Virus record (IMG/VR): IMGVR_UViG_3300033182_000980
Span: 124,001-188,000 of that record
Reading direction: 5' to 3' (one strand)
DNA: 64,000 nt
Shown in pieces: positions 10,211-61,594 of this stretch (position 1 is its first letter; each line of letters starts with the position of its first letter). The notes beneath the pieces were generated by a model, which saw nothing but the letters and a program-made list of their open reading frames with translations, did not search any database and had not been told where the DNA came from. Position numbers and translations under genes: made by a program.

Positions 10211-11488
10211 TCACCCTAAGAACCTTCCTACCTTAACAATCACTGACTCCTCATCCGAACGAATGTCTCCCTCCCAAATCACAAGGCAATCCAGCCCCAC
10301 CTCCGCATAAGCCTCTATCGTATTACGCTCATGCTCCTCTTTACTCATTCCTGTTAACGCTTGTGAGTGCCAATACCTACCAAAACACTCGACCACCTTT
10401 GTAGCACCCCTATAAGGATGTTCGGGATCATCACTCACACAAACTACAAAGTCTGGGTTCTTAAAGCCACCAATCGAACCGTCAAAGTTCTTCTTGCTTG
10501 GAAGAAATCTCCAATATGCCCCATTACCTGTAAAGGTGAGATTGTCGCTATATGAAGCTACCCTCGACTCAAACTTGTTCATCTCTTTCTGACTCATAAG
10601 CAAGATAGGGAACTCCACACCATACCTTGCTTTTAGAGTATCTTGAACCTTACCCCAATGTCCCTCAATAGCACCTGGAAACTCAACCCCATAACGATCC
10701 ATCATCGTAGCCCTAATCTCCCCCTTGCCTTGCTCGGACGCAAAGTAGTGGCTTCCATAGTTTTCAATCATCGTCTTGAGTTGTTTCTGCCTAAACTCCT
10801 CCACAGCACTCGTGTAAGGCACACCGTATCGCTCCATGTTAGTCGCTACAACCTTCTCCATGACTTCTTCACTCATGCTAGGGATCGGCACTCCATAACG
10901 CTCTATATTCGTTGCCTCAATCTTAGCCCTTAGCTCTGCTGACCCGAATAGCGTCCCACCATACCTCTCAAGATTAGTAGCCAATGTCTTAGCCTTGACC
11001 CCATCATTCTGTTGAGGGTTGACTACACCATATTTCTCAAGGTTCGTCTGCTTGATCTTATCCTGTACGCTCTCCCAAGCAAAAGGGTTATCCTTACCCT
11101 TTAAGATTGGACGCTTACCATCAAGAGCCTCTTGCACCTTTTCAAAGACACTACTCTCCTTTGAGAAAGGGTTCTCTGCACCATAACGCTTGAGGTTAGT
11201 CTGTTTACGCTTCTCCACAGACTCTTTGCTGTGGGCAGGATTCTCAACCCCATAACGATTTAACATAGTTTGTTTGCGTCTAAACTTTGAGATCGCTTTC
11301 TTATCTCGACTTTGCCATACCCCACATCCACTCTTATGTCTTTTCATCTGTGAGTTTGAGGTAGATTCATGTCCACAGATACATGGTGTGATTGGTTCGG
11401 GTTTCCAGTTAGGCCAGCACTTTGCCATGTGGCGGCTATTGATTCGATCCCCTTTGAACTCTCTTTTACAGTGAGGGCAAGTAGCCAT
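10211..11488 (-). CDS. Putative homing endonuclease (Zn fingers, YG repeats, Vsr/DUF559-like nuclease)
   Basis: N-terminal CPHC and C.CGH motifs; nine (R/K/N)YG repeats; C-terminal NPDFV...VVECFGRYWH...CLVIWE. Confidence 0.8.
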   Translation of the reverse strand: MATCPHCKREFKGDRINSRHMAKCWPNWKPEPITPCICGHESTSNSQMKRHKSGCGVWQSRDKKAISKFRRKQTMLNRYGVENPAHSKESVEKRKQTNLKRYGAENPFSKESSVFEKVQEALDGKRPILKGKDNPFAWESVQDKIKQTNLEKYGVVNPQQNDGVKAKTLATNLERYGGTLFGSAELRAKIEATNIERYGVPIPSMSEEVMEKVVATNMERYGVPYTSAVEEFRQKQLKTMIENYGSHYFASEQGKGEIRATMMDRYGVEFPGAIEGHWGKVQDTLKARYGVEFPILLMSQKEMNKFESRVASYSDNLTFTGNGAYWRFLPSKKNFDGSIGGFKNPDFVVCVSDDPEHPYRGATKVVECFGRYWHSQALTGMSKEEHERNTIEAYAEVGLDCLVIWEGDIRSDEESVIVKVGRFLG

Positions 11489-17782: not shown

Positions 17783-18328
17783 TTAGCGTTTGATAGAGAT
17801 GACGAGATCACTGCCCCCTCTAGCTGTGAAGTCAATGCCCCTAGCTAACTTCTCTGCGTCAATGTAATCAACCTCATCGCCTTCATCATAGTTAGCATTT
17901 TGTTCAGCAACCCCTAAGTTATATTCATTAATCCATTCACTATTTTTAAACCCATTAATGAAGGCTGTCTGAAATCGTCCGTCCACTGCAATAAACTTTC
18001 CTGTTTTTGAACAAACAAGCCCAGCCCACCAGCGAGCACTAGGTTTAGTTGCAGGTAAAACATCTACGCCAGAAAGGACAATCTCTCCATGACGCAAAAG
18101 AAAACCTGCCCAGTTATCCCCAAGAGCACGACCAACCTTATTTGAGAGGGTCATTACTTCTTTACGCTTCATACCCTTAGCTTCTTCCCATAAGGGGAGT
18201 TTGATTCTTAGCTGACTAAGAATCTTTACAACCTCGGTGGACTTGATGTGGTTTTCAGACGCTTGTCTTTCGAGCCGAGCGACTCTCATTTCAAGGCTTC
18301 TGATTACTTCACTTGCTGATTTTCTCAT
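17783..18328 (-). CDS. Leader-tagged protein 1 (MRKSASEVIRSLEMRVARLERQAS)
   Basis: Start reassigned to ATG 18328 (GGAG RBS); shared leader; motif B upstream. Confidence 0.8.
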   Translation of the reverse strand: MRKSASEVIRSLEMRVARLERQASENHIKSTEVVKILSQLRIKLPLWEEAKGMKRKEVMTLSNKVGRALGDNWAGFLLRHGEIVLSGVDVLPATKPSARWWAGLVCSKTGKFIAVDGRFQTAFINGFKNSEWINEYNLGVAEQNANYDEGDEVDYIDAEKLARGIDFTARGGSDLVISIKR

Positions 18329-18379
18329 GGTTTTTTCTCCATTCAAGGTTAAGGTTAAAGAGATCACCAATGAGAAGAT

Positions 18380-18391
18380 ATAAACAAACTA
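18380..18391 (-). promoter_or_regulatory. Motif B (TAGTTTGTTTAT)
   Basis: Upstream of leader-tagged ORF 18328. Confidence 0.55.
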
Positions 18392-19135
18392 TTGGTCTAG
18401 GGGTGGGATCTTCCCATGCTTGACGAAGTTAGCGTGGGCGAGAGGCCATAGCTTTTGGATTTGCCGAGAAATCTCTCTAGCGAGTAGTTTGATCTCCCAT
18501 TGAGCGTCAGCGTGATCTCGTTTAGCAATAAAGCTATTAACCCAGTTGTGGAGAGAACCTGTCGCCCAATAAGTTGTGTATAGGTTCTGTGGAAGAACCA
18601 TACGAGCTTGATCTCTTGCGACCCCTTTTTCGACTAACTGATTATAGAGTCGGATAGATTCAGTCGCATGGTTCTTGATAGCAGAGACAGCATCTAGCTT
18701 GAGGAACTTAGGGAAGTCATTGGGGTCGAACTCAACTACAGGGTTGAAGGTTTCGTCAAGGCTGGCTTGCCTGTTCTTAGTGTCTTGCTTACGCATCTCA
18801 CTTGGGAAGTAAAACTCGATGTCCGAGCTTGTGTATCGCCTAGAAATCTCGTTGTAAGAAAATGTTCTGTGTCTCATCTGTTGTCGTGCAACGAAGAGGG
18901 GGGCTTTGATCCAAAACGATACGACATTATGTTCTGTGGTTGAGGTGTGCCCTTCTTTGATGAGGAAGTTGCAGAGTCGTTCCTCACGCTCACCCATCTC
19001 TGTGCTGACTTGCCCTAGACTCGCCCTAGCACTGTTGACGATTGTGAGGTCATCGCCCATAGCTTGAATGAGGGCTACTCCTCCGATACCGTCATCATAA
19101 ATACTGACCATCTCAGATCTAAAGTCATTCGTCAT
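18389..19135 (-). CDS. thyX: FAD-dependent thymidylate synthase
   Basis: ThyX motif RHRTFSYNEISRRY, plus GH.STTEH and ARDQARMVLPQ. Confidence 0.95.
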   Translation of the reverse strand: MTNDFRSEMVSIYDDGIGGVALIQAMGDDLTIVNSARASLGQVSTEMGEREERLCNFLIKEGHTSTTEHNVVSFWIKAPLFVARQQMRHRTFSYNEISRRYTSSDIEFYFPSEMRKQDTKNRQASLDETFNPVVEFDPNDFPKFLKLDAVSAIKNHATESIRLYNQLVEKGVARDQARMVLPQNLYTTYWATGSLHNWVNSFIAKRDHADAQWEIKLLAREISRQIQKLWPLAHANFVKHGKIPPLDQ

Positions 19136-20360: not shown

Positions 20361-21242
20361 ATGCTTCATCTCTTAGACCCCTTTACAGCTCATAAAATAG
20401 CTATTTCTTTACTAAAAAGATCTTTTCCGTATCCGAAAATCCATGACCCACATAATGTATTTGGGTTAGATTTCCCTAATCGGTTAGGTCTTAGTGCTGG
20501 CTTCGATAAAGACGCGGTTGCTTTGAGGGGCTTAAAGTCTTTCGGCTTCGGTCATGTGGAGGTAGGTACAGTCACTCTTGCTATGCAGAGAGGGCACACC
20601 CCTCAGTATATAGAGAGGCAACCAAACGCACTTATCAATAAGCTCGGACTCCCTAATGTCGGGGTGAACCAGATGGTTCAAAACATCAAAAAATGCCGAC
20701 CTAAAGGATTAGTCCTTGGAGGCTCTATCGCTTATGGCGATATGGGAAATCCTGGATATTGTCTCACCGAGATTTATGAGACATTCTCCCGACTGCGTAA
20801 GAGTGTAGATTACATCGTCCTAAATGGGTCTTGTCCGAATGTAGAGACACCAGAGAACATATATAAATGCTTAAACCTCATAGACCATACTGACACCCCT
20901 GTTCTTGTTAAGCTCCACATCATGGAGGACAAGATGAAGTTGATTCACACTTTAAATGTTCTCAAGGAGAGCGGGGTTAAGGGAGTGATCTGTAGCAATA
21001 CGCTCCCCACAGTAAAAGGGGGGTTGTCGGGCAAGCCTCTAACACATATCGGGCATCAGCAGTTAGAATGGGTGAAAGAGAACAGCGACTACCCTGTGAT
21101 TTCTAGTGGAGGTGTGATGACCCCTCAAGATGCTGTTGATCGTATTCGTCTTGGGGCTGATCTCGTACAGGTATATACAGGCTTCGTTTACGGAGGGATA
21201 ACCTTCCCTTATCGAGTGGCTAAGGCGATGAGGGGTTTGTAG
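20361..21242 (+). CDS. pyrD: Dihydroorotate dehydrogenase (class-2-like, compact)
   Basis: LDP..AH, GLSAGFDKD, GFGHVEVGTVT, N.LGLPN.G, SCPN, GGLSGKPL, ISSGGV, GADLVQVYTGFVY.G. Confidence 0.92.
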   Translation: MLHLLDPFTAHKIAISLLKRSFPYPKIHDPHNVFGLDFPNRLGLSAGFDKDAVALRGLKSFGFGHVEVGTVTLAMQRGHTPQYIERQPNALINKLGLPNVGVNQMVQNIKKCRPKGLVLGGSIAYGDMGNPGYCLTEIYETFSRLRKSVDYIVLNGSCPNVETPENIYKCLNLIDHTDTPVLVKLHIMEDKMKLIHTLNVLKESGVKGVICSNTLPTVKGGLSGKPLTHIGHQQLEWVKENSDYPVISSGGVMTPQDAVDRIRLGADLVQVYTGFVYGGITFPYRVAKAMRGL

Positions 21243-21286
21243 TTTCTTTATGCCACTACATAAGTGATCTCTTTAACCCTTAACCA
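21236..21286 (+). repeat. 51-bp direct repeat, copy 1 (contains motif B at 21240-21251)
   Basis: TTTGTAGTTTCTTTATGCCACTACATAAGTGATCTCTTTAACCCTTAACCA, identical to 21892-21942. Confidence 0.95.
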
Positions 21287-21302
21287 TGATGGAGAATGAC
21301 CT

Positions 21303-21884
21303 ATGAGAAGATCAGCCAGTGAGATTATTAACGGCCTTGAAATGAGAATCGCTCGCCTTGAGCGTCAAATGCGTGTGGCGGCTAACTACAACCCAAATGA
21401 CACCTTTGAGATCGTAAAGGGGAAGGGTTTTATTCGTATCTATGTTGGCGGTAAGTATAACGACAAACGCACAATTTTGGATCTCAAAGAGACTTTCAAA
21501 GAGGTCTTTGCCAAGGAGTTCATGGACAGTAATGGTCTACCACCAGATTTTACAGTCGAAAGATGTGTTGAGGATGCCTTTGACAGCTCTAACTTGATTG
21601 AAGATTTGAACCGAGTTGCTCCAGGGAGAGGTGAAAGAGCTATCAATTTTAATCTTTACAACACAGATAAGTTTCTTAAAAATGTTGTGGGAGAGCTTGA
21701 GGATAGCCGAGGTGAATTCGATAATCCAGATCACGGTAATCCGGAATGGGAAGATTATTTTCTTGAATGGTCTGATGAATATGAAGCAGACACTGCTGTT
21801 AAGAAAGCTGTAAAAGCACTTATGGATAAGTATGGGAAAGTCAATCCAAACAGGATCGACCCTCGCACTTATCGCCTGTCCTAA
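21303..21884 (+). CDS. Leader-tagged protein 2 (MRRSASEIINGLEMRIARLERQ)
   Basis: Shared leader; RBS GGAG. Confidence 0.85.
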   Translation: MRRSASEIINGLEMRIARLERQMRVAANYNPNDTFEIVKGKGFIRIYVGGKYNDKRTILDLKETFKEVFAKEFMDSNGLPPDFTVERCVEDAFDSSNLIEDLNRVAPGRGERAINFNLYNTDKFLKNVVGELEDSRGEFDNPDHGNPEWEDYFLEWSDEYEADTAVKKAVKALMDKYGKVNPNRIDPRTYRLS

Positions 21885-21891
21885 GACAGTA

Positions 21892-21942
21892 TTTGTAGTT
21901 TCTTTATGCCACTACATAAGTGATCTCTTTAACCCTTAACCA
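21892..21942 (+). repeat. 51-bp direct repeat, copy 2 (contains motif B at 21896-21907)
   Basis: Identical to 21236-21286. Confidence 0.95.
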
Positions 21943-21957
21943 AATGGAGAACATACC

Positions 21958-22773
21958 ATGAGAAGATCAGCAAGTGAGGTCATCAGCGACCTTGAAATGA
22001 GAATCGCTCGCCTTGAGAAATCAGCGGCTCGCCATGAGCTACCTAAAAAAGTGTTGGCAGAGCTTGAAGATCTGCTTAGTGAAGATCCCTTCTATGAGAA
22101 TGACATGGAGGATTATTGGTTTACTATTAAGGTAAACAAAGCTAAAGAGATTGGCTACAGGGAAGAAATGAGTTCATACTCGGAAAACTTTCATGTATAC
22201 GAGTATGAGGTCGAAGCTACAGTCACTCTCAATGACTTGATCGTTGATGACGCTACGATTGAGGATCCTCGTTCAAGGCTATACCACTTTGTTTATGAGG
22301 CACTTGAACAGGCTGACTTTTCTGGTGTGCGAGTGTTGAAAGACGCTGGTTTTGATGTCAAAAAGGTTGGGACTCCCAAACTTACCACTAGAAGTGGTTA
22401 TCCTTCTAAGCTAGAAGTTCCTGTTAAAATCGTTTGTGTTGCGGACGGTAGGTCTGATTTTTTTCTAGTTAATAGAAGGGCAAACAGCCGTCTTGCTTCT
22501 ACTCGTAAGGTTGCTGGACACATAGTTCTCGCAGGTACTGTAAATGTTCGTCAGCTTAGACGAGATCTTGAGGACACCTTCGGCATTGAGGACATCGAGA
22601 TTGAAGATGGTGTTCTTACTTTCCTCATGTCAACAATGGATAACAAGCAGGTGGAGAAGCAAGTTAAATCACTTGCTAAGAAGCATGATGTGAAGTTTGA
22701 AAAGGGTGAGTTCACCGATGGTCTTGGAATGATCTACACCAAGAACGCTTCACGCAGAAATCGTATGCGTTAA
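21958..22773 (+). CDS. Leader-tagged protein 3 (MRRSASEVISDLEMRIARLEKSAA)
   Basis: Shared leader; RBS GGAG. Confidence 0.85.
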   Translation: MRRSASEVISDLEMRIARLEKSAARHELPKKVLAELEDLLSEDPFYENDMEDYWFTIKVNKAKEIGYREEMSSYSENFHVYEYEVEATVTLNDLIVDDATIEDPRSRLYHFVYEALEQADFSGVRVLKDAGFDVKKVGTPKLTTRSGYPSKLEVPVKIVCVADGRSDFFLVNRRANSRLASTRKVAGHIVLAGTVNVRQLRRDLEDTFGIEDIEIEDGVLTFLMSTMDNKQVEKQVKSLAKKHDVKFEKGEFTDGLGMIYTKNASRRNRMR

Positions 22774-23742: not shown

Positions 23743-23754
23743 TAGTTTGTTTAT
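23743..23754 (+). promoter_or_regulatory. Motif B (TAGTTTGTTTAT)
   Basis: Upstream of leader-tagged ORF 23797. Confidence 0.55.
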
Positions 23755-23796
23755 AACTACCTTGTAGTGTCTTACTTATATGAATGGAGAACTGTA

Positions 23797-24489
23797 ATGA
23801 GAAGATCAGCATCAGAAGTCATTAGCGACCTTGAAGCTCGTGTAGCTCGCCTTGAAAAGCAGGCTAAAAAGGTAACGATTGCAAGCGAAGAAAAGCTAGT
23901 TGAGCGATATATTAAATCAACAAGGGGTGTTCTTGATGTTTCTGTCGATTTATCGAAGCGAGACAGGATAACAATGGATATAGACTTTCATGGAACAGTT
24001 TTCCATTTCGAGGGGGAGTGCGATCAAGACATGGAAAGGATCTATGGAGGGTCTAAGACTGCAAATCCTGGAGCTTTGGGTGCATTTTTTATGATGAATG
24101 CCTTAAGACCACGAAGGAGAGGTCGTGGTCGAAGTCGTCATGTTGGAAACACATACACATTCAGACACCCTCATCCTTTTCCTCGCTCAAGGTGGGATTC
24201 TCCAACTATTTATGTCTTTACTCAGTTTGGTGATCTCTATGGTGGTGGTGGCACTAAAGATATTTATGAAACGCTTAAGGATTTGCATAATAACACAATG
24301 AAGAAAAAGCAAATGGATGAGGAGCAAAGGCAAAGAGACGAAGAACTTCGTATCGAGCGTAAAAGGAGTGAGGAGGCTCAAGCTCATGGGGAAAGGATCA
24401 GATTAGAGCGTGAAGAGAGGAAGCGTAAGAAAAGGGAGATGTATGAGGCGAACCGAGCTAGGAATGAAGAAAGACGAAGAAATAGGTGA
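23797..24489 (+). CDS. Leader-tagged protein 4 (MRRSASEVISDLEARVARLEKQA)
   Basis: Start reassigned to ATG 23797 (GGAG RBS); charged coiled-coil C-terminus. Confidence 0.85.
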   Translation: MRRSASEVISDLEARVARLEKQAKKVTIASEEKLVERYIKSTRGVLDVSVDLSKRDRITMDIDFHGTVFHFEGECDQDMERIYGGSKTANPGALGAFFMMNALRPRRRGRGRSRHVGNTYTFRHPHPFPRSRWDSPTIYVFTQFGDLYGGGGTKDIYETLKDLHNNTMKKKQMDEEQRQRDEELRIERKRSEEAQAHGERIRLEREERKRKKREMYEANRARNEERRRNR

Positions 24490-24554: not shown

Positions 24555-25085
24555 ATGCACTATGCTGGAATAGGTAGTAGGAAAACACCACAAGCCTGTC
24601 TTGACTTTATGACTAAGGTAGGTCGAGTCTGTACTAAGAAAGACTTGATCCTACGCTCTGGTGGAGCTGTCGGTGCTGACCAAGCCTTTGAGCGAGGGTG
24701 CGATCTTGAAGGTGGCCAGAAAGAAATCTTTACACCCAAGAGCCAATACATCGTTGAGCATGAATGGGCTGTCGAGAAAGCTAAGGCTGTGTGTTGGGAA
24801 TACCCTTTACACAAGATGAAGCCTTACACACGCTCTCTCATTATACGCAATATGTATCAGATCTTTGGTGATGACCCAGAACACCTCAAGCCTGTTAAGT
24901 TTGTGGTGTTCTATTGTGAGGGCGATCCACTTATGCAAGGAAAGTTATCGGGGGGTACGAGGTATGCAGTAAGGGCGGCTCATAACTACAACATCCCTCA
25001 TTACAACCTACGCACCCATCAAGTACACTTTGCGAATGTGCTTAAAGCGTTCCCCGATGTTTGGGATGACCCCAACCCATTTTAG
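24555..25085 (+). CDS. SLOG-superfamily (DprA/Smf-like) protein
   Basis: YAGIGSRKTP, LRSGGAVGADQAFERG, SGGTRYAVR.A. Confidence 0.8.
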   Translation: MHYAGIGSRKTPQACLDFMTKVGRVCTKKDLILRSGGAVGADQAFERGCDLEGGQKEIFTPKSQYIVEHEWAVEKAKAVCWEYPLHKMKPYTRSLIIRNMYQIFGDDPEHLKPVKFVVFYCEGDPLMQGKLSGGTRYAVRAAHNYNIPHYNLRTHQVHFANVLKAFPDVWDDPNPF

Positions 25086-25648
25086 CGTTTTACAACCCTT
25101 CTGGTATCTACATTCACTTCGTAGGTATTGACCCAAGAGCCACCTTCGGCACTCTCCCATTTCACCTCAAAAGTGAGTGTGTTTCCGTTGATGCCTTTGT
25201 ATCTCATATCATCAGTATAACGCATTTCACCGTCCCACCACTCATTCCTCTCGGCAAGGTCGCTAAGGTATTGACTAAGCACACCCTCCCCAATCGGAAT
25301 AAGTTGATTACGAGCTTCATTTGGGTTCGGTTGGCTTTTGAGGAGTCTTTGAACCTCTCCCTTAAAACTGACACCTGATGGTAGAGAAGGGACAGCGTGT
25401 TCGTAGTCATTATGCTTTCTGTAGATGATCTTACGAAGGGTACGAGATTGCTTCTCGCTCAACGCAGTAGCTGGCTCAATTCCTCTGCGTCTGTTGAGTA
25501 TTCTTAGCATATCACTGACAAACCCACGCTCAAACTTGTTGAGTGTTTCGCAGTTATCGAGGATGATTCTCAAAAGGTGAGAGATCTTACCTTGACGATC
25601 ACTCGCCTTTTCGTTTCTTGGTGGCCATTGTGTAGCTGTTCTTCTCAT
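25082..25648 (-). CDS. Hypothetical protein (begins MRRTA; partial leader only)
   Basis: RBS GGAG; motif A variant upstream. Confidence 0.7.
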   Translation of the reverse strand: MRRTATQWPPRNEKASDRQGKISHLLRIILDNCETLNKFERGFVSDMLRILNRRRGIEPATALSEKQSRTLRKIIYRKHNDYEHAVPSLPSGVSFKGEVQRLLKSQPNPNEARNQLIPIGEGVLSQYLSDLAERNEWWDGEMRYTDDMRYKGINGNTLTFEVKWESAEGGSWVNTYEVNVDTRRVVKR

Positions 25649-25671
25649 GGTTCATTCTCCTTACATGATGT

Positions 25672-25688
25672 AATAAATAAGGGGTTAC
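25672..25688 (-). promoter_or_regulatory. Motif A variant (GTAACCCCTTATTTATT)
   Basis: Upstream of ORF 25648. Confidence 0.5.
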
Positions 25689-25719
25689 ACTAGGTCGTCC
25701 ATAAATGTGCTACAAATCT

Positions 25720-25953
25720 TTATCTAATGTTTTCTACAAGCACTTCACAAGACATCTCTAGTATCTTATCCGCGTATGATTGAGAGCAACTAACGAAAGG
25801 TGCTATTCGTACCCCTTTTCGTTCGTATGCACATTCGTTCAAATAACGATGAGCTAGATCGCATGAGTCTTTCCTTATGCGTTCTAACTTTTCCTCTTTC
25901 GTTTCAAACTTACAACCACTAAACAGGATGGTAATAATAATCAACGCTCTCAT
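25720..25953 (-). CDS. Putative lipoprotein
   Basis: Lipobox-like ILFSGC. Confidence 0.55.
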   Translation of the reverse strand: MRALIIITILFSGCKFETKEEKLERIRKDSCDLAHRYLNECAYERKGVRIAPFVSCSQSYADKILEMSCEVLVENIR

Positions 25954-25976: not shown

Positions 25977-27158
25977 ATGTTTTTTAAAAACTTAAAGTCA
26001 TTAGCTAGGTCAAAGAAATCTAGCCTCTGTGTTGGTCTTGACGATCCGAATGAAAGCCAAAGGGTAGAGAGAGTCTGCTCAATCATAGATCAGACTGAAC
26101 CTTATGTGGTCTGCTACAAGTTAAACCCAGCTTTCTATCATGGTAATGCAGAGCATATAAAAGCTATTACAGATTACATGAATGAGAGAGGTCTACTCTG
26201 GATCTACGATGGGAAGCTCGGAGATGTGCCTCATACAAACACCGAGTATGCCAAGTATGTTTATGATGTCTTAGGGGCGAGTGCCATGACAGCCCACCCT
26301 TATTGTGGATATGACTCCCTCACTCACCTCATTCGTAAAGATAAAGGTCTATTCGTCTTAGCGAGGACTACAAACCCTTATGCGTATAAGATACAGAGTC
26401 GGGTTCAAGATCACCTCTATGAGTGGTGTAGTCGTTCTAAAGAGATGGGTCTTGTTGTAGCTGGTAATAAAGAGGCTTTCCTACATGAGATTAGAAAGAA
26501 CCTTCCGAACACTTGGTTCTTATCACCAGGCATCGGGGCACAAGGTGGGGGGATCAGATATGCTGTTCCAAACACTCTGTATTCAATGAGTCGGACGATC
26601 CTAAACGCATCCAATCCTGCTGAAGTGGCGAAGGAATATGGTAGGCAGTCTTACTTTGATTTAGAGATTGAGCTTGAACACCACGAACTCATCAAGAGGG
26701 GAGAGTTCACATTAGCGAGTGGTCAGAAATCTAACCTGTATATTGACCTCAAGGGAGTGAGTGGAGTACCCGAACTATTTGATCGCATCGTTCACGAGCT
26801 GATTGAACTTCTCCCCACATCACATCAGATTGTGGGGATGGCAACTGCGGGTATCTCTTTCGCTTCTGTAATGGGTTCTTACCTCAATCGACCTTTTGGG
26901 TATGCGAGATCAGAGATCAAGTCGCATGGTACAGGGAAGATCATTGAGGGTAATGTTCAAAAGGGAGTGCCGATTGTCCTCATTGAAGATGTGGTATCGA
27001 CAGGGGGTTCATTGATTAAGGCTATCCTTGCCCTTAGAGAGCAAGGATATGAGGTTAATCAAGCGATTTCTGTAGTGGACAGGGGTATGGGTGGGTCAGA
27101 GGCATTAAAGGCAATAGGGGTTGATTTAAAGAGCCTTCTTAGTATGCACGATGTTTAA
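25977..27158 (+). CDS. pyrFE: Bifunctional OMP decarboxylase / orotate phosphoribosyltransferase (PyrF-PyrE fusion)
   Basis: N-terminal half: LCVGLD, YKLNPAFY, DGKLGDV, SPGIGAQGG. C-terminal half: FTLASGQKSNLYID, VLIEDVVSTGGS. Confidence 0.93.
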   Translation: MFFKNLKSLARSKKSSLCVGLDDPNESQRVERVCSIIDQTEPYVVCYKLNPAFYHGNAEHIKAITDYMNERGLLWIYDGKLGDVPHTNTEYAKYVYDVLGASAMTAHPYCGYDSLTHLIRKDKGLFVLARTTNPYAYKIQSRVQDHLYEWCSRSKEMGLVVAGNKEAFLHEIRKNLPNTWFLSPGIGAQGGGIRYAVPNTLYSMSRTILNASNPAEVAKEYGRQSYFDLEIELEHHELIKRGEFTLASGQKSNLYIDLKGVSGVPELFDRIVHELIELLPTSHQIVGMATAGISFASVMGSYLNRPFGYARSEIKSHGTGKIIEGNVQKGVPIVLIEDVVSTGGSLIKAILALREQGYEVNQAISVVDRGMGGSEALKAIGVDLKSLLSMHDV

Positions 27159-29679
27159 GTACATAATGGATATGTAAAGACTCGGTAGTACCTGAACCAT
27201 TCACATCAATACCTTGTGTACCAGTGTCTGAAAATACAAGCCTTAAATAAGGTGTGCCGCCGAGTGTTGCTATATCAACATTTAAGATTGGGAACTTCCA
27301 ATAGTCGTAATCTGTAAACGGTGCAGAAGAGTTTACGGTTAGTTCCACAGATACACTAAGGTTTGTGGGGGTTATCCAACTTTGGAGATTTGCACCACTC
27401 CAAATGTTCTTTCCACTATAGCTCTCGTATAAGCTCGCATAAGTCTCTCCAGTACCTATTGTAAGATCAAGATCAGAACCCCCCACATTAGTTTCTTCAT
27501 CTTTAAAGAAAAGAGGGATATAGCTTATTTCATCTCCAGCTGATGGTGTGCCGATTACAACGGTTCCATACCCAAGAGTTTGAATGTTAAGAGTGCTTAT
27601 AGTCCCAGTTCCATTTAGCCCAAAAAACCTGTTGTAAGTTGTTGGGTTAGAAATCTTTGTGGCTGAACTATCGTCAATTTCTATGTTTCCACCAGGAGCA
27701 CTTATGGCCATGTTGCCCCCACTAGTTGAGTATTCGTGATCTCCTGGTGCAACAGAGCTGAACTTGTCGGTCGCAGAGTCGATATGTACATAGGTAGTAT
27801 TTTTTAATGTGCCATCTGCTTTTGCTAAAAGCATCCGATCTTCTGTGCCAGCATAAGTTGGGGTTGAATTGGAAACAACCTTGACCTCACCCCTTGTGGT
27901 AGTTCCTGTTCCTGTTGTGAGGTTGATGTCTCCAGAGTTGTTTGCGTTCCCTGTACTAATGCTGACATTACCACTATCTTGACCGCCCGCATTTCCAGAT
28001 TTAAGGTAGGTATCACCACTCGCACCCGCTGATGTGTTTCCACTTTGGATACCAAGCTCGCCCGAACCAGAGGAAGCGTCCGAGTTTCCTGTAGAGATAT
28101 AAATAGCTCCACTCGTTCCCACAGCTCCACCATTCAAGCCTGTGTAGATCATTATCTCGCCAGTAGAACCTGTGTCTGTGCCAGATGTGTAAAGGTCAAT
28201 GCCTCCACTATTTCCATTTGTAGGTTCACTTGTGGAAATGGAAATGCCCCCTGTGGAAGTACCAGTCCCACTTTTAATCACTACTCCACCACTACCCCCA
28301 CCTGCGTTATTGCCTGTTGCTATGGTGATAATGCCACTTGTTAATCCATCTGTAGTGCCTGTGCTAATAGAAATCTCACCACTAGGCCCCGAACTGCCAC
28401 TTGCACCCGTGTTATTTCCTGTACTTAGTGTAAGATCTCCCGACCTTACATTACTTGTTTCTGTTTTAAGGGTAGCATCACCACTAGCCCCTCCTGTGCC
28501 AACACCCGACTTGAGAGAAACATTACCACTAGCTCCATTAGTGGCTGTACCAGAGTAGAGGTTTAAAGCACCCGATGTCGTGTGCCCTTGGCCACTGTAA
28601 ATAGAAATCGCACCACTCGAATGAGTGTTGTTCGTGGCATTGCCTGTGTAGAGGTTAATTGCTCCACTATCCCCATTGATAGTAGAGATGCCTGTTCTCA
28701 TCTCAAGATCACCTGTATTTCTCCCTGCATTTGAGGAGAATAAATACACAGTACCACTATCTACTGTAGCCGAAGAACCAGACTTTATAAAGACTGAACC
28801 ACTACTACCTGTTGACGCTTGCCCCGACTCTAATAGTAGTGATCCACTATCTCCACTACCTTGTGGGTTGCCACTCTTTAAGGTTACATTACCACTAGTT
28901 GCTTCTTCTGATTCACCGCTTTGAATCGTGACTGCTCCACTAATGTTTGCAAGTCTAGTAGAACCAGAACTCATTGTGATCGAACCCGTATTGCCTTCAG
29001 TTGAATCACCTGTAAACAAAACAAGTGTGCCAGAAGTAGCAGTTGTAGTTGAACCTGTGTTGACGAGGACATTCCCACTTGGTGCAGTGCTTGTCTCACC
29101 TGTTCTCATCGTTATTCGGCCTGACTCGTCAGTACCTCCAGACCCTGTGTATAGAAATAAGTTGCCCGAATGTCCTGCGTTTGCAGTCGAGCTTGTACCT
29201 CCACTTTCAATCCTTATATTTCCACTATAAGAGTTAGTATGGTCATGTGGTGTGCCTGTTTGAATGGTGATTGGGCCAGAGTATTTTTCAGCAGTGACCC
29301 CTCCTGTGTTGATAACCACAGCCCCTGTATGCTCGGAACTAGATTGACTCTCACCCCCTGTGGATATAAGCACATTCCCATATAAGTTGGGGGCAGGGTC
29401 AGTTAAACTCTCTCCCCCAAAGATGGTTATTGACCCTCCAAAATCACCATCTCCAGACCTTATGGTGACATCTCCACCTCGTTTGCCATGACCACTATCG
29501 CCAGCCTCAACAGTAACAGACCCCGAATAGACACCTGTTGTTCCATTTGATCCAGATACGAGGACTCCGACTTCTCTTTCATCAACGAGAGAGGTGTCGG
29601 CAGAGTTAGGCTCAACTTTGACAGCTTTTGCTTTGTTTTGAGCTTCTATAGTTTTTTGTATCGCAGAAATCGTAGACAT
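27139..29679 (-). CDS. G/S/T-rich repeat protein, putative beta-solenoid fibre/adhesin
   Basis: About 35-40 tandem ~15-aa repeats of form SG-x-(I/V/L)-x-(I/L)-x-(T/S)G; RBS AGGAG. Confidence 0.7.
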   Translation of the reverse strand: MSTISAIQKTIEAQNKAKAVKVEPNSADTSLVDEREVGVLVSGSNGTTGVYSGSVTVEAGDSGHGKRGGDVTIRSGDGDFGGSITIFGGESLTDPAPNLYGNVLISTGGESQSSSEHTGAVVINTGGVTAEKYSGPITIQTGTPHDHTNSYSGNIRIESGGTSSTANAGHSGNLFLYTGSGGTDESGRITMRTGETSTAPSGNVLVNTGSTTTATSGTLVLFTGDSTEGNTGSITMSSGSTRLANISGAVTIQSGESEEATSGNVTLKSGNPQGSGDSGSLLLESGQASTGSSGSVFIKSGSSATVDSGTVYLFSSNAGRNTGDLEMRTGISTINGDSGAINLYTGNATNNTHSSGAISIYSGQGHTTSGALNLYSGTATNGASGNVSLKSGVGTGGASGDATLKTETSNVRSGDLTLSTGNNTGASGSSGPSGEISISTGTTDGLTSGIITIATGNNAGGGSGGVVIKSGTGTSTGGISISTSEPTNGNSGGIDLYTSGTDTGSTGEIMIYTGLNGGAVGTSGAIYISTGNSDASSGSGELGIQSGNTSAGASGDTYLKSGNAGGQDSGNVSISTGNANNSGDINLTTGTGTTTRGEVKVVSNSTPTYAGTEDRMLLAKADGTLKNTTYVHIDSATDKFSSVAPGDHEYSTSGGNMAISAPGGNIEIDDSSATKISNPTTYNRFFGLNGTGTISTLNIQTLGYGTVVIGTPSAGDEISYIPLFFKDEETNVGGSDLDLTIGTGETYASLYESYSGKNIWSGANLQSWITPTNLSVSVELTVNSSAPFTDYDYWKFPILNVDIATLGGTPYLRLVFSDTGTQGIDVNGSGTTESLHIHYVLKHRAY

Positions 29680-30606: not shown

Positions 30607-32031
30607 TCAGACCCTTATTTTGTAATGCTTGATGAGATCTTCTCTAATCTTAGTCACATAAGCATCATCACAGGTTTCATTGATAAGTGCGTTTCTTAGA
30701 CTTCTAAGGTATTTAACTATCCTATCGTCCTCGTGCTTTTTACTAAGCTCTTTTAAGAGTGCATGGTGATCCCACTCACCTGTGTATTTTTTGCTCTCTT
30801 CATTCGTAAGATACACGACACATAAGACACCATAAGGGTATTTCTCGGAGTAAGCTCTCATAACGCTTCGTATGTAGGTGTTTTCTTCGCTAGGTCTGCC
30901 ATGCTTGTAGCCTTCTCGCTTGTCCAATGTCTTTAGGACTTTTTCAAGAGACTCCACAGGGTACTCAAGCACTAAACCTTGCATAGACCCACCTGGTTTA
31001 GTTCCTATGACTAAGTGTCCGTTATTTTCTGACACTACATTGAAAGACCTAGAAATTGAGTTAATATGTCCTTTCCAACTGTTTGTGATGAGATCCTCAT
31101 GTTCTGGATCACTCATAAGCGTTCCGTAAGCAAAGACCCTAAACACTTTTTCATTCGGAGGAGGTGTTTCTACCACTTCCTCTTTGACTTCAATCTCTTC
31201 AATGACGACTTTGTTTTCCTTGTTCGAGGTGACTCGTTTGACTTCGAGCTTGCATCTCGCAGGCTTCTTGAAGTGCTTTTCATACCCTACAAACTCGGAG
31301 TCGTGATCGACTAAGTACATAGTCATTGTTCGTGTTTTTGCATCGAACAGGAACTGATTTGATGTGAACATATTGTCGGTTTTACGGACAACATTGTTAG
31401 GGTTCGGCACATCTTTGAGCCTAAGAGCGAAGAGTTTCTTGATGATGTCCTCTGATTTCTTGGGGCCACTTTCAAGGACTTTCATCATGGTTTCATATCG
31501 TGTTTCGGAGGACTCACGATCATCACCAGATATATAACCTGCGTCTGAATAGAAGATCCCATGATTTGTCCGAACAAAGTTCTTTTCTAGGATCTCGTCT
31601 ACTTTAGCCTCGTGTTTTGAGGTTTGCTCTATAACGAAAGCGTGTCTCTCATCCGAGATCATCGTATGCCCTTTAACACCTGTTTTGAGGTGTGTGAGGA
31701 TATGCAACGCTTGTAAGAGGGAGGTACATTCTAAAGCAGAGATGATCCGATGGGCATCTTGGGAAAATCGGATCGCTTTAGATTTCTTTTTTGTACCCTC
31801 TTTTTCATCTTCGAGAACCATTAGGGCCGCGTTAGATACAACAATCCCATGCTCATTGATGCCTTCAACCCAACCTGTACGCTCATCTTTGAAATACAGG
31901 ATCTCAACCCCATTCTCAGAGATGATGTGGTGTACTCGAATGTCGGGGATATAGTTTCTGTCTCTATTTTTAAAGACCCACTTTTTATCGCCAATATGGG
32001 TGATAGCGATTACACAGGATTGCTTTTTCAT
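30607..32031 (-). CDS. Ntn-hydrolase (C45/C59-like) fused to gamma-glutamylcyclotransferase (ChaC-like)
   Basis: N-terminal part: Cys6, KNRDR, GINEHG, RTNH, S..R. C-terminal part: VFAYGTLM, LDKREGY. Confidence 0.7.
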   Translation of the reverse strand: MKKQSCVIAITHIGDKKWVFKNRDRNYIPDIRVHHIISENGVEILYFKDERTGWVEGINEHGIVVSNAALMVLEDEKEGTKKKSKAIRFSQDAHRIISALECTSLLQALHILTHLKTGVKGHTMISDERHAFVIEQTSKHEAKVDEILEKNFVRTNHGIFYSDAGYISGDDRESSETRYETMMKVLESGPKKSEDIIKKLFALRLKDVPNPNNVVRKTDNMFTSNQFLFDAKTRTMTMYLVDHDSEFVGYEKHFKKPARCKLEVKRVTSNKENKVVIEEIEVKEEVVETPPPNEKVFRVFAYGTLMSDPEHEDLITNSWKGHINSISRSFNVVSENNGHLVIGTKPGGSMQGLVLEYPVESLEKVLKTLDKREGYKHGRPSEENTYIRSVMRAYSEKYPYGVLCVVYLTNEESKKYTGEWDHHALLKELSKKHEDDRIVKYLRSLRNALINETCDDAYVTKIREDLIKHYKIRV

Positions 32032-38781: not shown

Positions 38782-38793
38782 TAGTTTCTTTAT
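38782..38793 (+). promoter_or_regulatory. Motif B (TAGTTTCTTTAT)
   Basis: Upstream of leader-tagged ORF 38831. Confidence 0.55.
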
Positions 38794-38830
38794 AGGCTTC
38801 TCATAAGTAATCGACAAAGGAGAATGACTT

Positions 38831-39253
38831 ATGAAGAGAAACGCATCTGAACTGATAAGAAATCTTGAACAACGAGTAGCTAGACTTGAGCAAACAAAAA
38901 CTGCTGGTGGTCTGCCTCTTGAGTTACACTTTTACGAGGGCAAGGTAGGAGTTGCTGTGGACTCGGACACCCCCGCTTCTACCGAACTTAAAAGCCTCTA
39001 CCATTCTGATGTTAAAGAGCAATCACTAGGGTATGAGATTGTTTATTTCAAAGAGCCACGACTTACTACACAGGGCGTTGATACACTTCGGATATGGGGT
39101 GGTGGAAAAACCATATCGAGAGGGAAGCTGACTCCCAAAAACAGCTCGGTAGATCAAAGGGATCTCGTTCTAAAGTTGTACTTGAACCCTATGCTTTATA
39201 CATACCTCAAAAAGCTATTTGATCTTACTACGACCGAGATTACTATCTACTAA
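38831..39253 (+). CDS. Leader-tagged protein 5 (MKRNASELIRNLEQRVARLEQTKTAG)
   Basis: Shared leader; RBS AAAGGAG. Confidence 0.85.
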   Translation: MKRNASELIRNLEQRVARLEQTKTAGGLPLELHFYEGKVGVAVDSDTPASTELKSLYHSDVKEQSLGYEIVYFKEPRLTTQGVDTLRIWGGGKTISRGKLTPKNSSVDQRDLVLKLYLNPMLYTYLKKLFDLTTTEITIY

Positions 39254-40909: not shown

Positions 40910-40921
40910 TAGTTTATTTAT
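40910..40921 (+). promoter_or_regulatory. Motif B (TAGTTTATTTAT)
   Basis: Upstream of ORF 40954 and the sheath gene. Confidence 0.55.
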
Positions 40922-53585: not shown

Positions 53586-53658
53586 GGGCTGTTAGCTCAA
53601 TCGGTAGAGCACCGGACTTTTAATCCGTTGGTTCTGGGTTCGAGTCCCAGACGGCCCA
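53586..53658 (+). tRNA. tRNA-Lys(TTT)
   Basis: Cloverleaf; CCGGA-CTTTTAA-TCCGT. Confidence 0.93.
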
Positions 53659-53680
53659 TTATTTAAACACTCTTGTATGA

Positions 53681-54013
53681 TTGGAGATGTCAGTGATCTA
53701 TGACAAGACTAAACTAGATGGGCATTGGTATTGCTCTACCCAGTTTCAAAAGGTGGGGGAGTTTGTGTTCTCCCTCCTCCATAATGACTTTGACCCCGAA
53801 GAAGCAGGTCGGGTGATCTATTGGGCGATTTGTAATCTTGCCGATACTGGATATGTGCGAAAGGGTATGTTGACCACCCTTGATGGGATGCTCGCAGACG
53901 AGGGCATATCTGTTGAAGATAAAAGGTATGCTCGGCTCGTAAGGGGGTATGTGGACAACTATGACTTTGGTTTGGAGCGTACCCCTAAGAACTGGCATAG
54001 GAGTACAAAATGA
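53681..54013 (+). CDS. Hypothetical protein
   Basis: ORF track; ATG at 53687 has a GGAG RBS. Confidence 0.6.
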   Translation: MEMSVIYDKTKLDGHWYCSTQFQKVGEFVFSLLHNDFDPEEAGRVIYWAICNLADTGYVRKGMLTTLDGMLADEGISVEDKRYARLVRGYVDNYDFGLERTPKNWHRSTK

Positions 54014-54585
54014 GTGATAAATCTGATCTTAAAATGCTGGTCAAGGTGGTGAACACCTTACAAGAGGAATCCGACAATCGTTTCATCAAGGGCATGATTA
54101 CTCGGATACAGGGATTGATTGAGACAATGGAGCAAGACCTTAACCTCAAGGTTGAGACTACAGACACCTATGCTCGTAAGGAATACTTTAAGGACTATGT
54201 GGTCAACAGATATAGCCCTATCATCAACCAAGAGGTTTATGCCTATGAGTTTGTGCGTGGGAAGATCCGAAAGAAGTTTCCAATCGTATTGAAAGAAATC
54301 ACTAAGGAGATCATTAGGGTGAGTCGTGATGGCTACCTTGCTTCCGAGCTACCTCAACACAGCTCTTATTGGAGGGATTGTCATTGTGTAGCTGGAGAAG
54401 ATCCTTATGAGAACCTTGATAACTGTCGTGCTCATTATTGGCGTGAATATCGTACAGATAAAGACCCAGTAGAGTGGTGGAGTAAAGAGCCATTCTTAGG
54501 TCGTAAGGTTCGAGTATGGAAGAAAGATTTAGCTCTGCCAGAGCCTTCATTAAGTGAAAAAATGCAGTCAGTTAAGAAGGCATAA
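54010..54585 (+). CDS. Hypothetical protein
   Basis: ATGA overlap; RBS AGGAG. Confidence 0.65.
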   Translation: MSDKSDLKMLVKVVNTLQEESDNRFIKGMITRIQGLIETMEQDLNLKVETTDTYARKEYFKDYVVNRYSPIINQEVYAYEFVRGKIRKKFPIVLKEITKEIIRVSRDGYLASELPQHSSYWRDCHCVAGEDPYENLDNCRAHYWREYRTDKDPVEWWSKEPFLGRKVRVWKKDLALPEPSLSEKMQSVKKA

Positions 54586-54799
54586 TCATATAATAGATAT
54601 GTGTTCTTAACGAGTGTCATAAGGAGTTGAATATGACCCTACAACTATTTGTAACCTTCGCTATCTGCTTCATGTCTGGTGGCATACACTTTTCAAACTA
54701 CAAGCTGTCGAGATCAACTTGGACCTGGTATGTGATTGCAGTCCTGTTCTCAATCCCAGCTTTTACTAAAGTCATCACAATGGCTCAAGGATAAGAATA

Positions 54800-61066: not shown

Positions 61067-61540
61067 TTACTTACGATTGCAAGGACCTCTTCCGCCACCT
61101 GGCTTTGGGCAGATTTTTCTCTTGTAAGTGGGTGAGTCCATGAAGTTTTCACGATACTTTTTATTGTACTTAGCTCTTTCGGGAGAACCTGGTTTTCCTG
61201 AATTTGCTTCTCCGTACTCATGGTGGAGTCGGTAGCAAGTCACACCATCACCAGGCTTGCCAAGACCTTCAAGGTTATCTTTGGTGTAGCAGTCTGCTTG
61301 GTTCTTGGGAGCAGGTGGGCTGTTATAATCGTTTTGGTTTTTGCTGTCCCCACCCCAAGGATTTCTCCCTGCTACTATGTCATCAGCCATGAACATACCA
61401 GCATCAATGTCGGCTTGTAGTTCAGCTAAGAAGGGGTCTGCATAGCGACTTGAGGCACTACGATTTGAGGGTGCTTGCCTCTCAAGGCGAGCCACACGAG
61501 CTTCAAGCTCACGAATAACTTCTGATGCTAATCTTCTCAT
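61067..61540 (-). CDS. Leader-tagged protein 6 (MRRLASEVIRELEARVARLERQA)
   Basis: Shared leader; RBS AAAGGAG; motif-B variant TAACTTATTTAT at 61583-61594. Confidence 0.85.
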   Translation of the reverse strand: MRRLASEVIRELEARVARLERQAPSNRSASSRYADPFLAELQADIDAGMFMADDIVAGRNPWGGDSKNQNDYNSPPAPKNQADCYTKDNLEGLGKPGDGVTCYRLHHEYGEANSGKPGSPERAKYNKKYRENFMDSPTYKRKICPKPGGGRGPCNRK

Positions 61541-61594
61541 AGCAATCTCCTTTGTGTGAATATGGACACAATAAGATTAAGTATAAATAAGTTA

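What the first reader, a model, noticed from the sequence alone, without database searches (positions are those of the whole stretch)
21236..22020. Identical 51-bp cassette in front of two adjacent but unrelated cargo genes
Seen: 21236-21286 equals 21892-21942. Near-identity continues through the RBS and leader codons (ATGAGAAGATCAGC...CCTTGAAATGAGAATCGCTCGCCTTGAG), then stops abruptly. ORF 25648 keeps a similar RBS spacer and only the first codons (MRRTA) but sits under motif A. Known: repeated regulatory cassettes drive modular gene shuffling in T4-type phages. Inference: the cassette is a recombination handle for adding, swapping or excising cargo; recombination between the copies would delete ORF 21303.
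Basis: partly seen in the sequence, partly recalled or inferred. Interest (0 to 1): 0.62.

Follow-up and report, generated by a model that had tools for sequence, protein, structure and literature searches.

The report
Promoter-plus-leader cassette that shuffles phage cargo
The repeat is one pair from about 30 copies of a portable unit in an uncultivated 376-kb marine phage: a virion-gene promoter, a ribosome site and a 23-residue protein tag, placed in front of hundreds of unrelated small proteins, and related strains show genes gained, lost, split and swapped exactly at this unit.

Summary
Window 21236-21286 equals 21892-21942 exactly, and similarity runs on to 21362/22017 (114/127). It is not an isolated pair. 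The 375,691-bp myovirus contig holds 28 strong and 3 weaker copies of the same unit. Each unit has the motif TAGTTTnTTTAT (also upstream of the capsid and tail-sheath operons), a 5'UTR (GTGATCT..AACCCTTAACC), a Shine-Dalgarno site, and a 23-codon leader MRRSASEvIRnLEmRIARLErQA.

The leader is selected as protein, is predicted helical with a zipper-like heptad pattern, and heads more than 1,100 distinct metagenomic protein clusters. No Pfam, PHROG or NCBIfam model and no GenBank phage matches it.

Related strains carry three alleles at this slot:
- leader-D1-C, as one gene;
- leader-D2-C, with a single cassette.
- the window's split form, leader-D1 followed by leader-D2-C.

A neighbouring leader gene (23797-24489) is present or absent between strains. 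The two cassette copies resemble each other more within a genome (about 90%) than orthologues do between genomes (73-79%), which indicates gene conversion.

The recombination-handle reading is therefore supported. That the leader targets cargo into the assembling virion, like T4's capsid-targeting sequence, is inferred and not shown.

The parts
21236..21286 (+). Cassette copy 1, non-coding part. Promoter-like motif TAGTTTCTTTAT at 21240-21251, overlapping the pyrD stop codon, then the conserved 5'UTR (GTGATCTCTTTAACCCTTAACC).
   Evidence: Exact 51-nt repeat. The motif is shared with 26 other leader genes.
21303..21884 (+). ORF leader-D1 (193 aa). The leader is codons 1-23 (21303-21371). D1 begins NYNPNDTFEI and ends RTYRLS-stop.
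   Evidence: D1 is joined to the C-module in one protein in relatives (P0012, P0015 and others). Absent from strain L128.
21876..21889 (+). Weak 5-bp hairpin spanning the stop codon of ORF 21303, followed by the T-rich start of cassette 2. Terminator-like.
   Evidence: Such hairpins are not a constant part of the cassettes.
21892..21942 (+). Cassette copy 2, non-coding part. Promoter-like motif at 21896-21907, then the 5'UTR.
21958..22773 (+). ORF leader-D2-C (271 aa). Leader 21958-22026. D2 is residues ~30-165. A disordered linker at residues 170-183 coincides with the recombination junction.
   Evidence: AF2 model with mean pLDDT 76.8: helix 5-23, low-confidence break at 23-25. D2 also exists as a stand-alone leader-D2 gene of ~169 aa (P0010, P0011, P0016, P0019).
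22489..22767 (+). C-module (residues 178-269 of ORF 21958). It is shared at 60-98% identity by many leader proteins that have different N-terminal domains. Predicted ferredoxin-like beta-alpha-beta fold.
   Evidence: VIA-align Z 8-8.8 to ACT/AsnC-type domains, which is a generic fold. Homology with L125 resumes exactly at 22489.
23743..24489 (+). Third cassette (promoter motif at 23743-23754) and its leader gene 23797-24489 (230 aa, with a basic, charged C-terminal tail). Present or absent between strains.
   Evidence: Missing in L001, L002, L128 and L125, with breakpoints at ~23724 and ~24546.
17783..18391 (-). Leader gene 17783-18328(-) with its cassette (promoter motif at 18380-18391).
   Evidence: The L001 orthologue has a 58-aa KOW-like extension fused in frame before the leader. 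L125 has no gene here.
38782..39253 (+). Leader gene 38831-39253 (140 aa) with promoter motif at 38782-38793. It lies just upstream of the tail-terminator-like and tail-sheath genes.
61067..61594 (-). Leader gene 61067-61540(-) (157 aa) with a variant promoter motif (TAACTTATTTAT) at 61583-61594.
25082..25730 (-). Degenerate member. It has a promoter-like TTTGTAGCACATTTAT, the SD GGAGAATGAACC, and only codons 1-5 (MRRTA) of the leader.
40910..40921 (+). The same promoter motif (TAGTTTATTTAT) in front of the operon that holds the 1619-aa tail sheath gene. Listed as the reference for promoter class.

Best explanation
The 51-bp repeat is the non-coding half of a portable expression-and-tagging cassette. 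The cassette is (i) the promoter motif tTTAATAGTTTaTTTATAg that this phage also uses for its capsid, sheath and other virion genes, (ii) a conserved 5'UTR and Shine-Dalgarno site, and (iii) 23 codons for an amphipathic, leucine-zipper-like helix (MRRSASEvIRnLEmRIARLE[KR]Q[AS]) followed by a flexible hinge.

The cassette precedes about 30 otherwise unrelated small genes in this genome and more than 1,100 protein clusters in metagenomes.

Shown:
- Because the cassette is repeated, homologous recombination and gene conversion occur at it. Together with breaks at inter-domain linkers, these events add, delete, split, fuse and swap cargo between closely related strains, including at this locus.

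Inferred:
- The motif is a late promoter.
- The leader is a virion-incorporation signal. It most likely docks cargo to the scaffold or core of the prohead, as the T4 capsid-targeting sequence does.
- The leader may be removed by the prohead protease near the LE[KR]Q[AS] hinge.
- On this reading the cargo is a fast-evolving set of packaged or ejected accessory proteins.
For: Family and anatomy:
- 28 ORFs begin with the leader, and 3 weaker copies exist.
- The upstream promoter, UTR and SD are conserved (alignment).

Promoter class:
- The motif precedes the MCP operon, the sheath operon, the orthologue of a Tunturi_5 virion protein, a tail-terminator-like gene and a lysozyme hub.

Peptide-level selection:
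- Codon entropy at positions 1/2/3 is 0.66/0.42/1.15.
- Ser6 is coded by TCA 14 times and AGY 10 times. Arg15 is coded by AGR 15 times and CGN 12 times.
- No conserved RNA fold was found.

Shape of the leader:
- AF2 gives a helix at residues 5-23, then a break.
- Invariant I9/L12/I16/L19 at a/d positions, with E13/R15/E20.

Breadth:
- 1,126 clusters at 50% identity match at E<=1e-3, and 143 of the 146 best rows re-scanned start at residue 1.
- 127 stretches in IMG/VR.
- 11 and 12 copies in two other huge-phage contigs.

Cargo diversity:
- 94 proteins fall into 72 BLAST clusters.
- Pfam hits 2 of 77: WGR and a weak HAAS.

Recombination:
- Three alleles at this slot.
- Concerted evolution: paralogues 114/127 and 113/127, orthologues 94/128 and 100/127, with flanks 19/20 and 17-18/18.
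- Presence/absence of gene 23797.
- Swaps, insertions and losses at other leader slots, with homology ending at leader codon ~23.
- Tandem neighbours are the most alike.

Literature analogue:
- T-even internal proteins are diverse and share only a CTS that loads them into the scaffolding core (PMC3012670; PMC9026906).
Against: - There is no direct evidence that any leader protein is in a virion or is cleaved.
- The phage is uncultivated and no proteome or transcriptome was available.
- Promoter timing is inferred only from which genes carry the motif, and some non-structural genes (for example a glutamine-synthetase-like ORF) carry it too.
- The leader is sometimes internal: after a 58-aa extension in L001, and at residues ~173 and ~308 of longer frames. 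Partial copies (R[IV]ARLE[KR]Q[AS]) occur between domains. This fits a cleavage or docking site, but does not require N-terminal targeting.
- No T4-type (L/I)xE site is present.
- A Pfam Peptidase_S77 search of the genome was empty but uninformative.
- The order of events (insertion versus deletion) is not resolved, because the three ingroup strains are nearly equidistant.
Confidence: 0.6

Rival explanations
1. The leader is a generic coiled-coil adaptor. It docks or oligomerises diverse late proteins on some other structure (capsid exterior, neck, fibres, or each other) and is not a signal for loading into the prohead interior.
For: - Heptad pattern with Ile at a, Leu at d, and complementary g/e charges R15/E20.
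- 'RIARLE' also occurs in the c-Jun zipper (papers found).
- The leader tolerates internal positions.
- Weak Foldseek rows for D2 point to neck and tail-completion proteins (probability up to 0.98, but TM <= 0.38).
Against: - Two to three heptads are short for a stable zipper.
- Cargoes are small, mostly orphan, some strongly basic and one membrane-spanning. That suits internal or ejected proteins better than decoration proteins.
- Thirty different proteins competing for one external site has no known precedent.
Confidence: 0.2
2. The conserved 5' coding stretch matters as nucleic acid (a translation-initiation or regulatory region, or simply the homology tract), and the peptide is incidental.
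For: - Codons 2-4 (AGA AGA TCA) and Leu12/Leu19 (CTT) are nearly fixed at the nucleotide level.
- The UTR and leader travel together.
Against: - Third positions vary about 2-3 times more than first and second positions.
- Ser and Arg switch between codon families while the residue is kept.
- RNAalifold finds no shared structure.
- The peptide recurs inside proteins, far from any start codon.
- It is conserved across more than 1,100 clusters at 50% identity.
Confidence: 0.07
3. The leader marks proteins for something unrelated to virions: export, timed degradation (a degron), or recognition by a phage chaperone.
For: An N-terminal position and a basic start (MRR) are common to many sorting signals.
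Against: - There is no hydrophobic core, so it is not Sec- or Tat-like.
- It shares its promoter with virion genes.
- No known family matches.
Confidence: 0.08
4. The pair is only a recent local duplication or an assembly artefact, with no wider meaning.
For: The two copies are adjacent, and they are the most similar pair in the genome.
Against: - The tandem arrangement recurs in independent samples (L001, L002).
- About 30 dispersed copies exist.
- The flanks of the two copies are unrelated, so the cargo was not duplicated.
Confidence: 0.03

Closest known systems
T4 / T-even internal proteins with a capsid-targeting sequence (CTS). IPI, IPII, IPIII and Alt; polymorphic ip locus (Repoila et al. 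1994, cited from memory and via PMC9026906 ref. 69; Mullaney & Black 1996)
   Same: A short N-terminal peptide is the only thing shared by otherwise unrelated, fast-evolving small proteins. The genes vary between close relatives. In T4 the peptide loads cargo into the scaffolding core and is cut off by the prohead protease (PMC3012670, PMC9026906).
   Different: - The phage lineage is unrelated. Its MCP matches phrog_2522, and its sheath is nearest to an uncultured 485-kb phage, Tunturi_5 and phage G.
- The leader is 23 residues and helical, against 10-19 residues in T4.
- It has no (L/I)xE site.
- There are about 30 genes per genome, dispersed, against a handful at one locus in T4.
- Packaging and cleavage have not been shown here.
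PeSL cassettes (promoter-early stem-loops) of T4-type phages (Arbiol et al. 2010, PMC2839356; Comeau et al. 2014, PMC4122927)
   Same: These are small repeated regulatory cassettes in front of ORFan genes. Insertions, deletions and replacements between near-identical phages are bounded by them.
   Different: - PeSLs are non-coding, early, sigma-70-like promoters plus a terminator stem-loop.
- Here the motif is shared with virion genes, and no sigma-70 match lies at the cassettes.
- A stem-loop is not a constant part.
- The repeat extends 69 nt into the coding sequence as a selected peptide.
- Mini-circles were not tested.
N-terminal propeptides of phiKZ / SPN3US head and ejection proteins, cut at AXE by a gp21-like protease (PMC10052503, PMC5694885)
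   Same: Both are giant myoviruses that package many proteins, several with N-terminal propeptides. The leader here holds an A5-S6-E7 tripeptide that fits AXE.
   Different: - Those propeptides are not a shared sequence across cargoes.
- Cleavage at E7 would remove only 7 residues.
- The protease here matches phrog_18299 and no Pfam family.
Encapsulation peptides of bacterial microcompartments and cargo-loading peptides of encapsulins (own knowledge)
   Same: A short amphipathic helix and a flexible linker are enough to load unrelated cargo into a protein shell. Encapsulin shells have the HK97 fold, like phage capsids.
   Different: These are cellular systems with few cargo types. Encapsulin peptides are mostly C-terminal. 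There is no repeated promoter cassette and no strain-level shuffling.
MuF-domain polymorphic toxins of temperate phages, and other polymorphic toxin systems (own knowledge)
   Same: A constant N-terminal part that rides in the capsid is combined with interchangeable C-terminal modules.
   Different: The constant part there is a whole domain of ~300 aa in one gene per phage. Here it is a 23-aa tag on about 30 genes.

Membership tests
PeSL regulatory cassettes (T4-type phages) | Strong sigma-70-like early promoter | tested here: not met
   No sigma-70-type match lies at 21236-21286 or 21892-21942. The conserved motif TAGTTTnTTTAT is shared with the MCP, sheath and other virion genes.
PeSL regulatory cassettes (T4-type phages) | Stem-loop terminator as a constant part of the cassette | tested here: not met
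   A weak hairpin lies at 21876-21889. However, the mean MFE of the 52 nt ending 2 nt inside the promoter motif (22 cassettes) is -9.4 kcal/mol, against -8.6 for random windows. RNAalifold finds no shared pairs.
PeSL regulatory cassettes (T4-type phages) | Indels and replacements between close relatives are bounded by the repeats | tested here: met
PeSL regulatory cassettes (T4-type phages) | Circular excision products (mini-circles) | not testable with these tools
   Only Logan contigs could be laid, with no raw reads. The 'goes back' joints are explained by cross-matching of similar leaders.
T4-type capsid-targeting sequence (CTS) proteins | Short N-terminal peptide shared by otherwise unrelated proteins | tested here: met
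T4-type capsid-targeting sequence (CTS) proteins | Host phage is T4-like, with a gp21 (Peptidase_S77) protease and cleavage at (L/I)xE | tested here: inconclusive
   The PF03420 search of the genome was empty, but the control also rang nowhere. The protease matches phrog_18299 only. The leader contains no [LI]xE tripeptide. Structural genes are nearest to Tunturi_5, phage G and LR745208, not T4.
T4-type capsid-targeting sequence (CTS) proteins | Peptide is necessary and sufficient for packaging into proheads, and is removed on maturation | not testable with these tools
   This needs virion proteomics or reporter fusions. The complex prediction of leader with MCP and scaffold gave no answer.
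phiKZ/SPN3US-type AXE propeptides | Cleavage C-terminal to A-X-E by a gp245/gp175-type protease | tested here: inconclusive
   A5-S6-E7 is nearly invariant and fits AXE (PMC10052503). The protease family is unassigned, and no cleavage data exist.

The most novel reading that the evidence does not exclude
A clade of uncultivated marine huge phages uses one universal 23-residue N-terminal tag, delivered by a mobile late-promoter cassette, to load a very large and rapidly reshuffled repertoire of orphan proteins into its virions for delivery into the host. The repertoire is about 30 proteins per genome and more than 1,100 clusters overall. The tag would then define, from sequence alone, the whole packaged or ejected 'effector' set of these phages. 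The cassette would be a natural plug-and-play system for evolving that set.
Probability: 0.4. Interest if true: 0.85.

Novelty: new variant of a known kind. Interest (0 to 1): 0.7.

Why it matters
Huge phages are known almost only from metagenomes, and most of their genes are orphans. A sequence tag that marks a co-regulated, co-sorted class of more than 1,000 orphan proteins gives a handle on them. If the tag is a virion-loading signal, the tagged set is a catalogue of candidate injected host-takeover and anti-defence proteins. The 23-residue helix would also be a compact tag for loading foreign proteins into large capsids.

Whatever the tag does, the locus is a clear natural example of regulatory-plus-coding cassettes driving gene gain, loss, splitting and domain swapping. 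Three alleles of one slot are captured in different samples, and there is measurable gene conversion. This extends the T4 PeSL and ip-locus models to an unrelated phage lineage and to a much larger scale.

Tried and rejected
- Conserved RNA structure in the 5'UTR and start region: RNAalifold on 17 cassettes gave no pairs. My hand-drawn pairing of UTR TGATCT with codons 2-4 has no compensating changes in the variants, so I dropped it.
- Stem-loop terminator as part of the cassette: not systematic.
- Complex prediction of MCP + scaffold-like protein + leader (residues 1-45): no answer, score 0.00. This is not evidence either way.
- Word search with the leader alone: only 3 hits, because a 22-aa match cannot reach significance against 5.8 billion sequences. 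The profile search replaced it.
- ESM Atlas look-alikes for both cargoes: nothing usable.
- Foldseek against PDB and BFVD with the ORF 21958 model: only weak rows, with neck and tail-completion proteins recurring at TM <= 0.38. VIA-align finds only a generic ferredoxin-like fold for the C-module. No function is assigned.
- Megablast and tblastn of the locus and the leader against 50,697 GenBank phage records: no match.
- pyrD-anchored search for the locus in two more distant huge-phage contigs (G001, G002): pyrD is absent there.
- Short-sided joints in the contigs of run X1 (21278>23783 and others): rejected as cross-matches between similar cassettes. The low-depth X4 contig is used only as a second sighting of the D1-C joint.
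- A leader-like 'RVARLA' in the acidic scaffold-like protein: kept as a lead only, because it was found post hoc.

No alternative genetic code was used.
Full report
**Observation.**
Window 21236-21286 and 21892-21942 are identical over 51 nt, and chance expectation is zero. After a 1-nt indel the similarity continues through the Shine-Dalgarno site and 20 codons, to 21362/22017 (114/127 in all). It then stops abruptly. Copy 1 starts in the last codons of pyrD (20361-21242). Copy 2 starts 7 nt after the stop of ORF 21303-21884.

**Context.**
- The window is bases 124001-188000 of a single 375,691-bp contig with 44.9% G+C.
- Its first 135 nt recur exactly 410 nt from its end.
- It is a huge myovirus. 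It has a 1619-aa tail sheath, an MCP matching phrog_2522, and a head-maturation protease matching phrog_18299.
- The nearest sequenced relatives are remote: an uncultured 485-kb phage (37% identity in the sheath), Tunturiibacter phage Tunturi_5 and Bacillus phage G.
- There is no nucleotide match among 50,697 GenBank phage records.

**The pair is part of a family.**
- Twenty-eight ORFs across the genome begin with the same 23 residues, consensus MRRSASEvIRnLEmRIARLE[KR]Q[AS]. A profile finds three weaker copies.
- Six lie in the window: 17783-18328(-), 21303, 21958, 23797, 38831 and 61067-61540(-).
- Most are preceded by the same non-coding unit: tTTgTAGTTTnTTTATa, about 10 variable nt, cCATaaGTGATCT..AACCCTTAACC, then aATGGAGAA and ATG (alignment).
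- The UTR element is essentially confined to leader genes.
- Among all 378 cassette pairs the window pair is the most similar upstream (0.92, median 0.65). Other tandem neighbours also rank high.

**Promoter class.**
The motif TAGTTTnTTTAT also stands about 30-115 nt upstream of several virion genes:
- the operon holding the MCP;
- the operon holding the tail sheath (window 40910);
- the orthologue of a Tunturi_5 virion structural protein;
- a tail-terminator-like gene;
- a lysozyme-hub gene.

No sigma-70-type match lies at the cassettes. I therefore read it as this phage's virion-gene (late) promoter. This is inferred from gene content only.

**The leader is selected as a peptide.**
- Entropy at codon positions 1/2/3 is 0.66/0.42/1.15.
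- Ser6 uses TCA 14 times and AGY 10 times. Arg15 uses AGR 15 times and CGN 12 times.
- RNAalifold finds no shared structure.
- AlphaFold2 on ORF 21958, with a 41-row alignment (pLDDT 76.8), gives this layout:
  - helix at residues 5-23;
  - break at 23-25;
  - a confident domain D2 at 30-165;
  - a disordered linker at 170-183;
  - a C-module at 184-253;
  - a disordered basic tail.
- Invariant I9, L12, I16 and L19 fall on a/d positions of a heptad repeat, with invariant or nearly invariant E13, R15 and E20 on the flanks.

**Breadth and cargo.**
- A profile of the leader finds 1,126 representatives of 50%-identity clusters at E<=1e-3, and 168 at E<=1e-10, among 1.84 billion proteins.
- Of the 146 best rows that I re-scanned, 143 start at residue 1.
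- IMG/VR holds 127 stretches. Two other huge-phage contigs carry 11 and 12 copies. LR745208 and Tunturi_5 carry none, and GenBank phages carry none.
- Ninety-four leader proteins fall into 72 BLAST clusters.
- Pfam names 2 of 77: WGR and a weak HAAS. PHROGs and NCBIfam add nothing functional.

**Strain comparison at this locus.**
- L001 and L002 (~91% identical) keep the tandem arrangement but lack the leader gene 23797-24489. There the retained promoter now feeds the next gene.
- L128, an 11,763-nt contig from another study (~90% identical), runs pyrD, one cassette, then the orthologue of ORF 21958.
  - Its single cassette aligns to both window copies.
  - It has the left flank of copy 1 and leader codons identical to copy 2.
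- L125, from a 345-kb relative (~82% identical), has one gene, leader-D1-C. It lacks window 21878-22488. The junction lies at shared codons R-L-(A/S)-S.
- A low-depth contig from a fourth study shows the same D1-C joint, 21872>22489.
- Every large indel in this 12-kb region falls on a leader gene.

**Concerted evolution.**
Cassette-plus-leader identity is 114/127 within the window genome and 113/127 within L001. Orthologous copies are only 94/128 and 100/127 identical, although their immediate flanks are 19/20 and 17-18/18. The copies are therefore homogenised within each lineage.

**Domain shuffling.**
- Homologues of ORF 21958 show that its C-terminal 92 residues are a module reused at 60-98% identity. 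It appears behind D1 (P0012, P0015, P0018 and others), behind D2, directly behind the leader (P0026, P0028, P0030), or behind other domains.
- D2 also exists alone.
- The two 'unrelated' cargoes are thus two halves of one recombining network.

**Other slots.**
- Homology to a 90-93% relative runs through promoter, UTR and leader, and ends at about codon 23. There one different cargo replaces two tandem leader genes.
- Elsewhere, relatives have extra, missing or relocated leader genes.
- In L001 a 58-aa KOW-like segment is fused in frame before a leader.
- Partial internal copies R[IV]ARLE[KR]Q[AS] sit between domains in several proteins.

**Interpretation.**
- Shown: the repeat is real; it is a composite promoter/UTR/leader cassette; and it is a site of recombination that changes cargo content between strains.
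- Inferred, by analogy with the T4 capsid-targeting sequence (PMC3012670, PMC9026906) and from co-regulation with virion genes: the leader brings cargo into the assembling virion and may be cleaved at its hinge.
- Not shown: packaging, cleavage, promoter timing and excised circles.
- The recombination behaviour parallels PeSL cassettes (PMC2839356). The unit fails two PeSL-defining features, the sigma-70 early promoter and the constant stem-loop. It also adds a coding part.

I file it as a new variant of a known kind.

Noticed in passing
L001:2189-2407 (orthologue of window 18322-18365, minus strand): In the ~91% relative, a 58-aa KOW/SH3-like segment (MGFTIGDTVKVVSGPLKG..) is fused in frame in front of the leader of the 17783-18328 orthologue. 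The leader therefore becomes internal. P0033 has the same N-terminal segment with a Pfam KOW hit.
   Followed up: partly
genome 50555-52096 (-), outside the window (locus L121): A very acidic 513-aa scaffold-like protein lies between the protease and the MCP. It has an EF-hand calcium-binding motif (Pfam E 1e-7) and two repeats, ..R(V/L)AR..LADNAVQVGT.., the first of which shares RVARL with the leader. Among frames of 80 aa or more, R[IV]A[RK]L otherwise occurs almost only in leaders.
   Followed up: partly
genome 91902 (+), 276239 (+) and the C-terminus of the 1171-aa ORF 53586-57101 (-): A second short shared motif (..RVAS/Y..M[KR]K/Q..) appears at two N-termini and near the C-terminus of the portal-position protein. 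It may be another sorting or docking peptide.
   Followed up: no
window 18389-19135 (-), 20361-21242 (+), 25977-27158 (+): Pyrimidine-metabolism genes are interleaved with the leader genes: thyX, a dihydroorotate dehydrogenase (pyrD), and a fused OMP decarboxylase/phosphoribosyltransferase (pyrF-pyrE).
   Followed up: partly
window 41391-46250 (+): The tail sheath gene encodes 1619 aa. Only the last ~330 residues match the sheath family (phrog_2839), so the protein carries a very large N-terminal extension.
   Followed up: no
window 27139-29679 (-): An 846-aa protein made largely of Ser/Gly/Thr-rich repeats (..SG..T..SG..), with no family match. It looks fibre-like.
   Followed up: no
window 30607-32031 (-): A fusion of an acyl-CoA:6-APA acyltransferase-like (Ntn-hydrolase) domain with a gamma-glutamyl cyclotransferase/ChaC-like domain. 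This is unusual for a phage.
   Followed up: no
window 10211-11488 (-): A 425-aa ORF matching phage homing-endonuclease families (phrog_3339, E 8e-31).
   Followed up: no
genome 78106-79827 (+) (locus L101) and 274815-275858 (+): Two long open frames in which a full leader lies internally, at residues ~303-308 and ~173. The first continues into a WGR domain. These are either fusions or operon partners that happen to lack an in-frame stop.
   Followed up: partly
genome 1-410 and 375281-375691: The start of the contig recurs 410 nt from its end (exact for the first 135 nt), and an IMG/VR contig (L089) bridges the two ends. This suggests a complete genome that is circularly permuted or terminally redundant.
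   Followed up: partly
genome 194762-194800 (+): One non-leader gene (MSDKWKAGPEV..) carries the exact UTR element TTAACCCTTAACC and the SD of the cassette. It may be a cassette whose leader was replaced.
   Followed up: no
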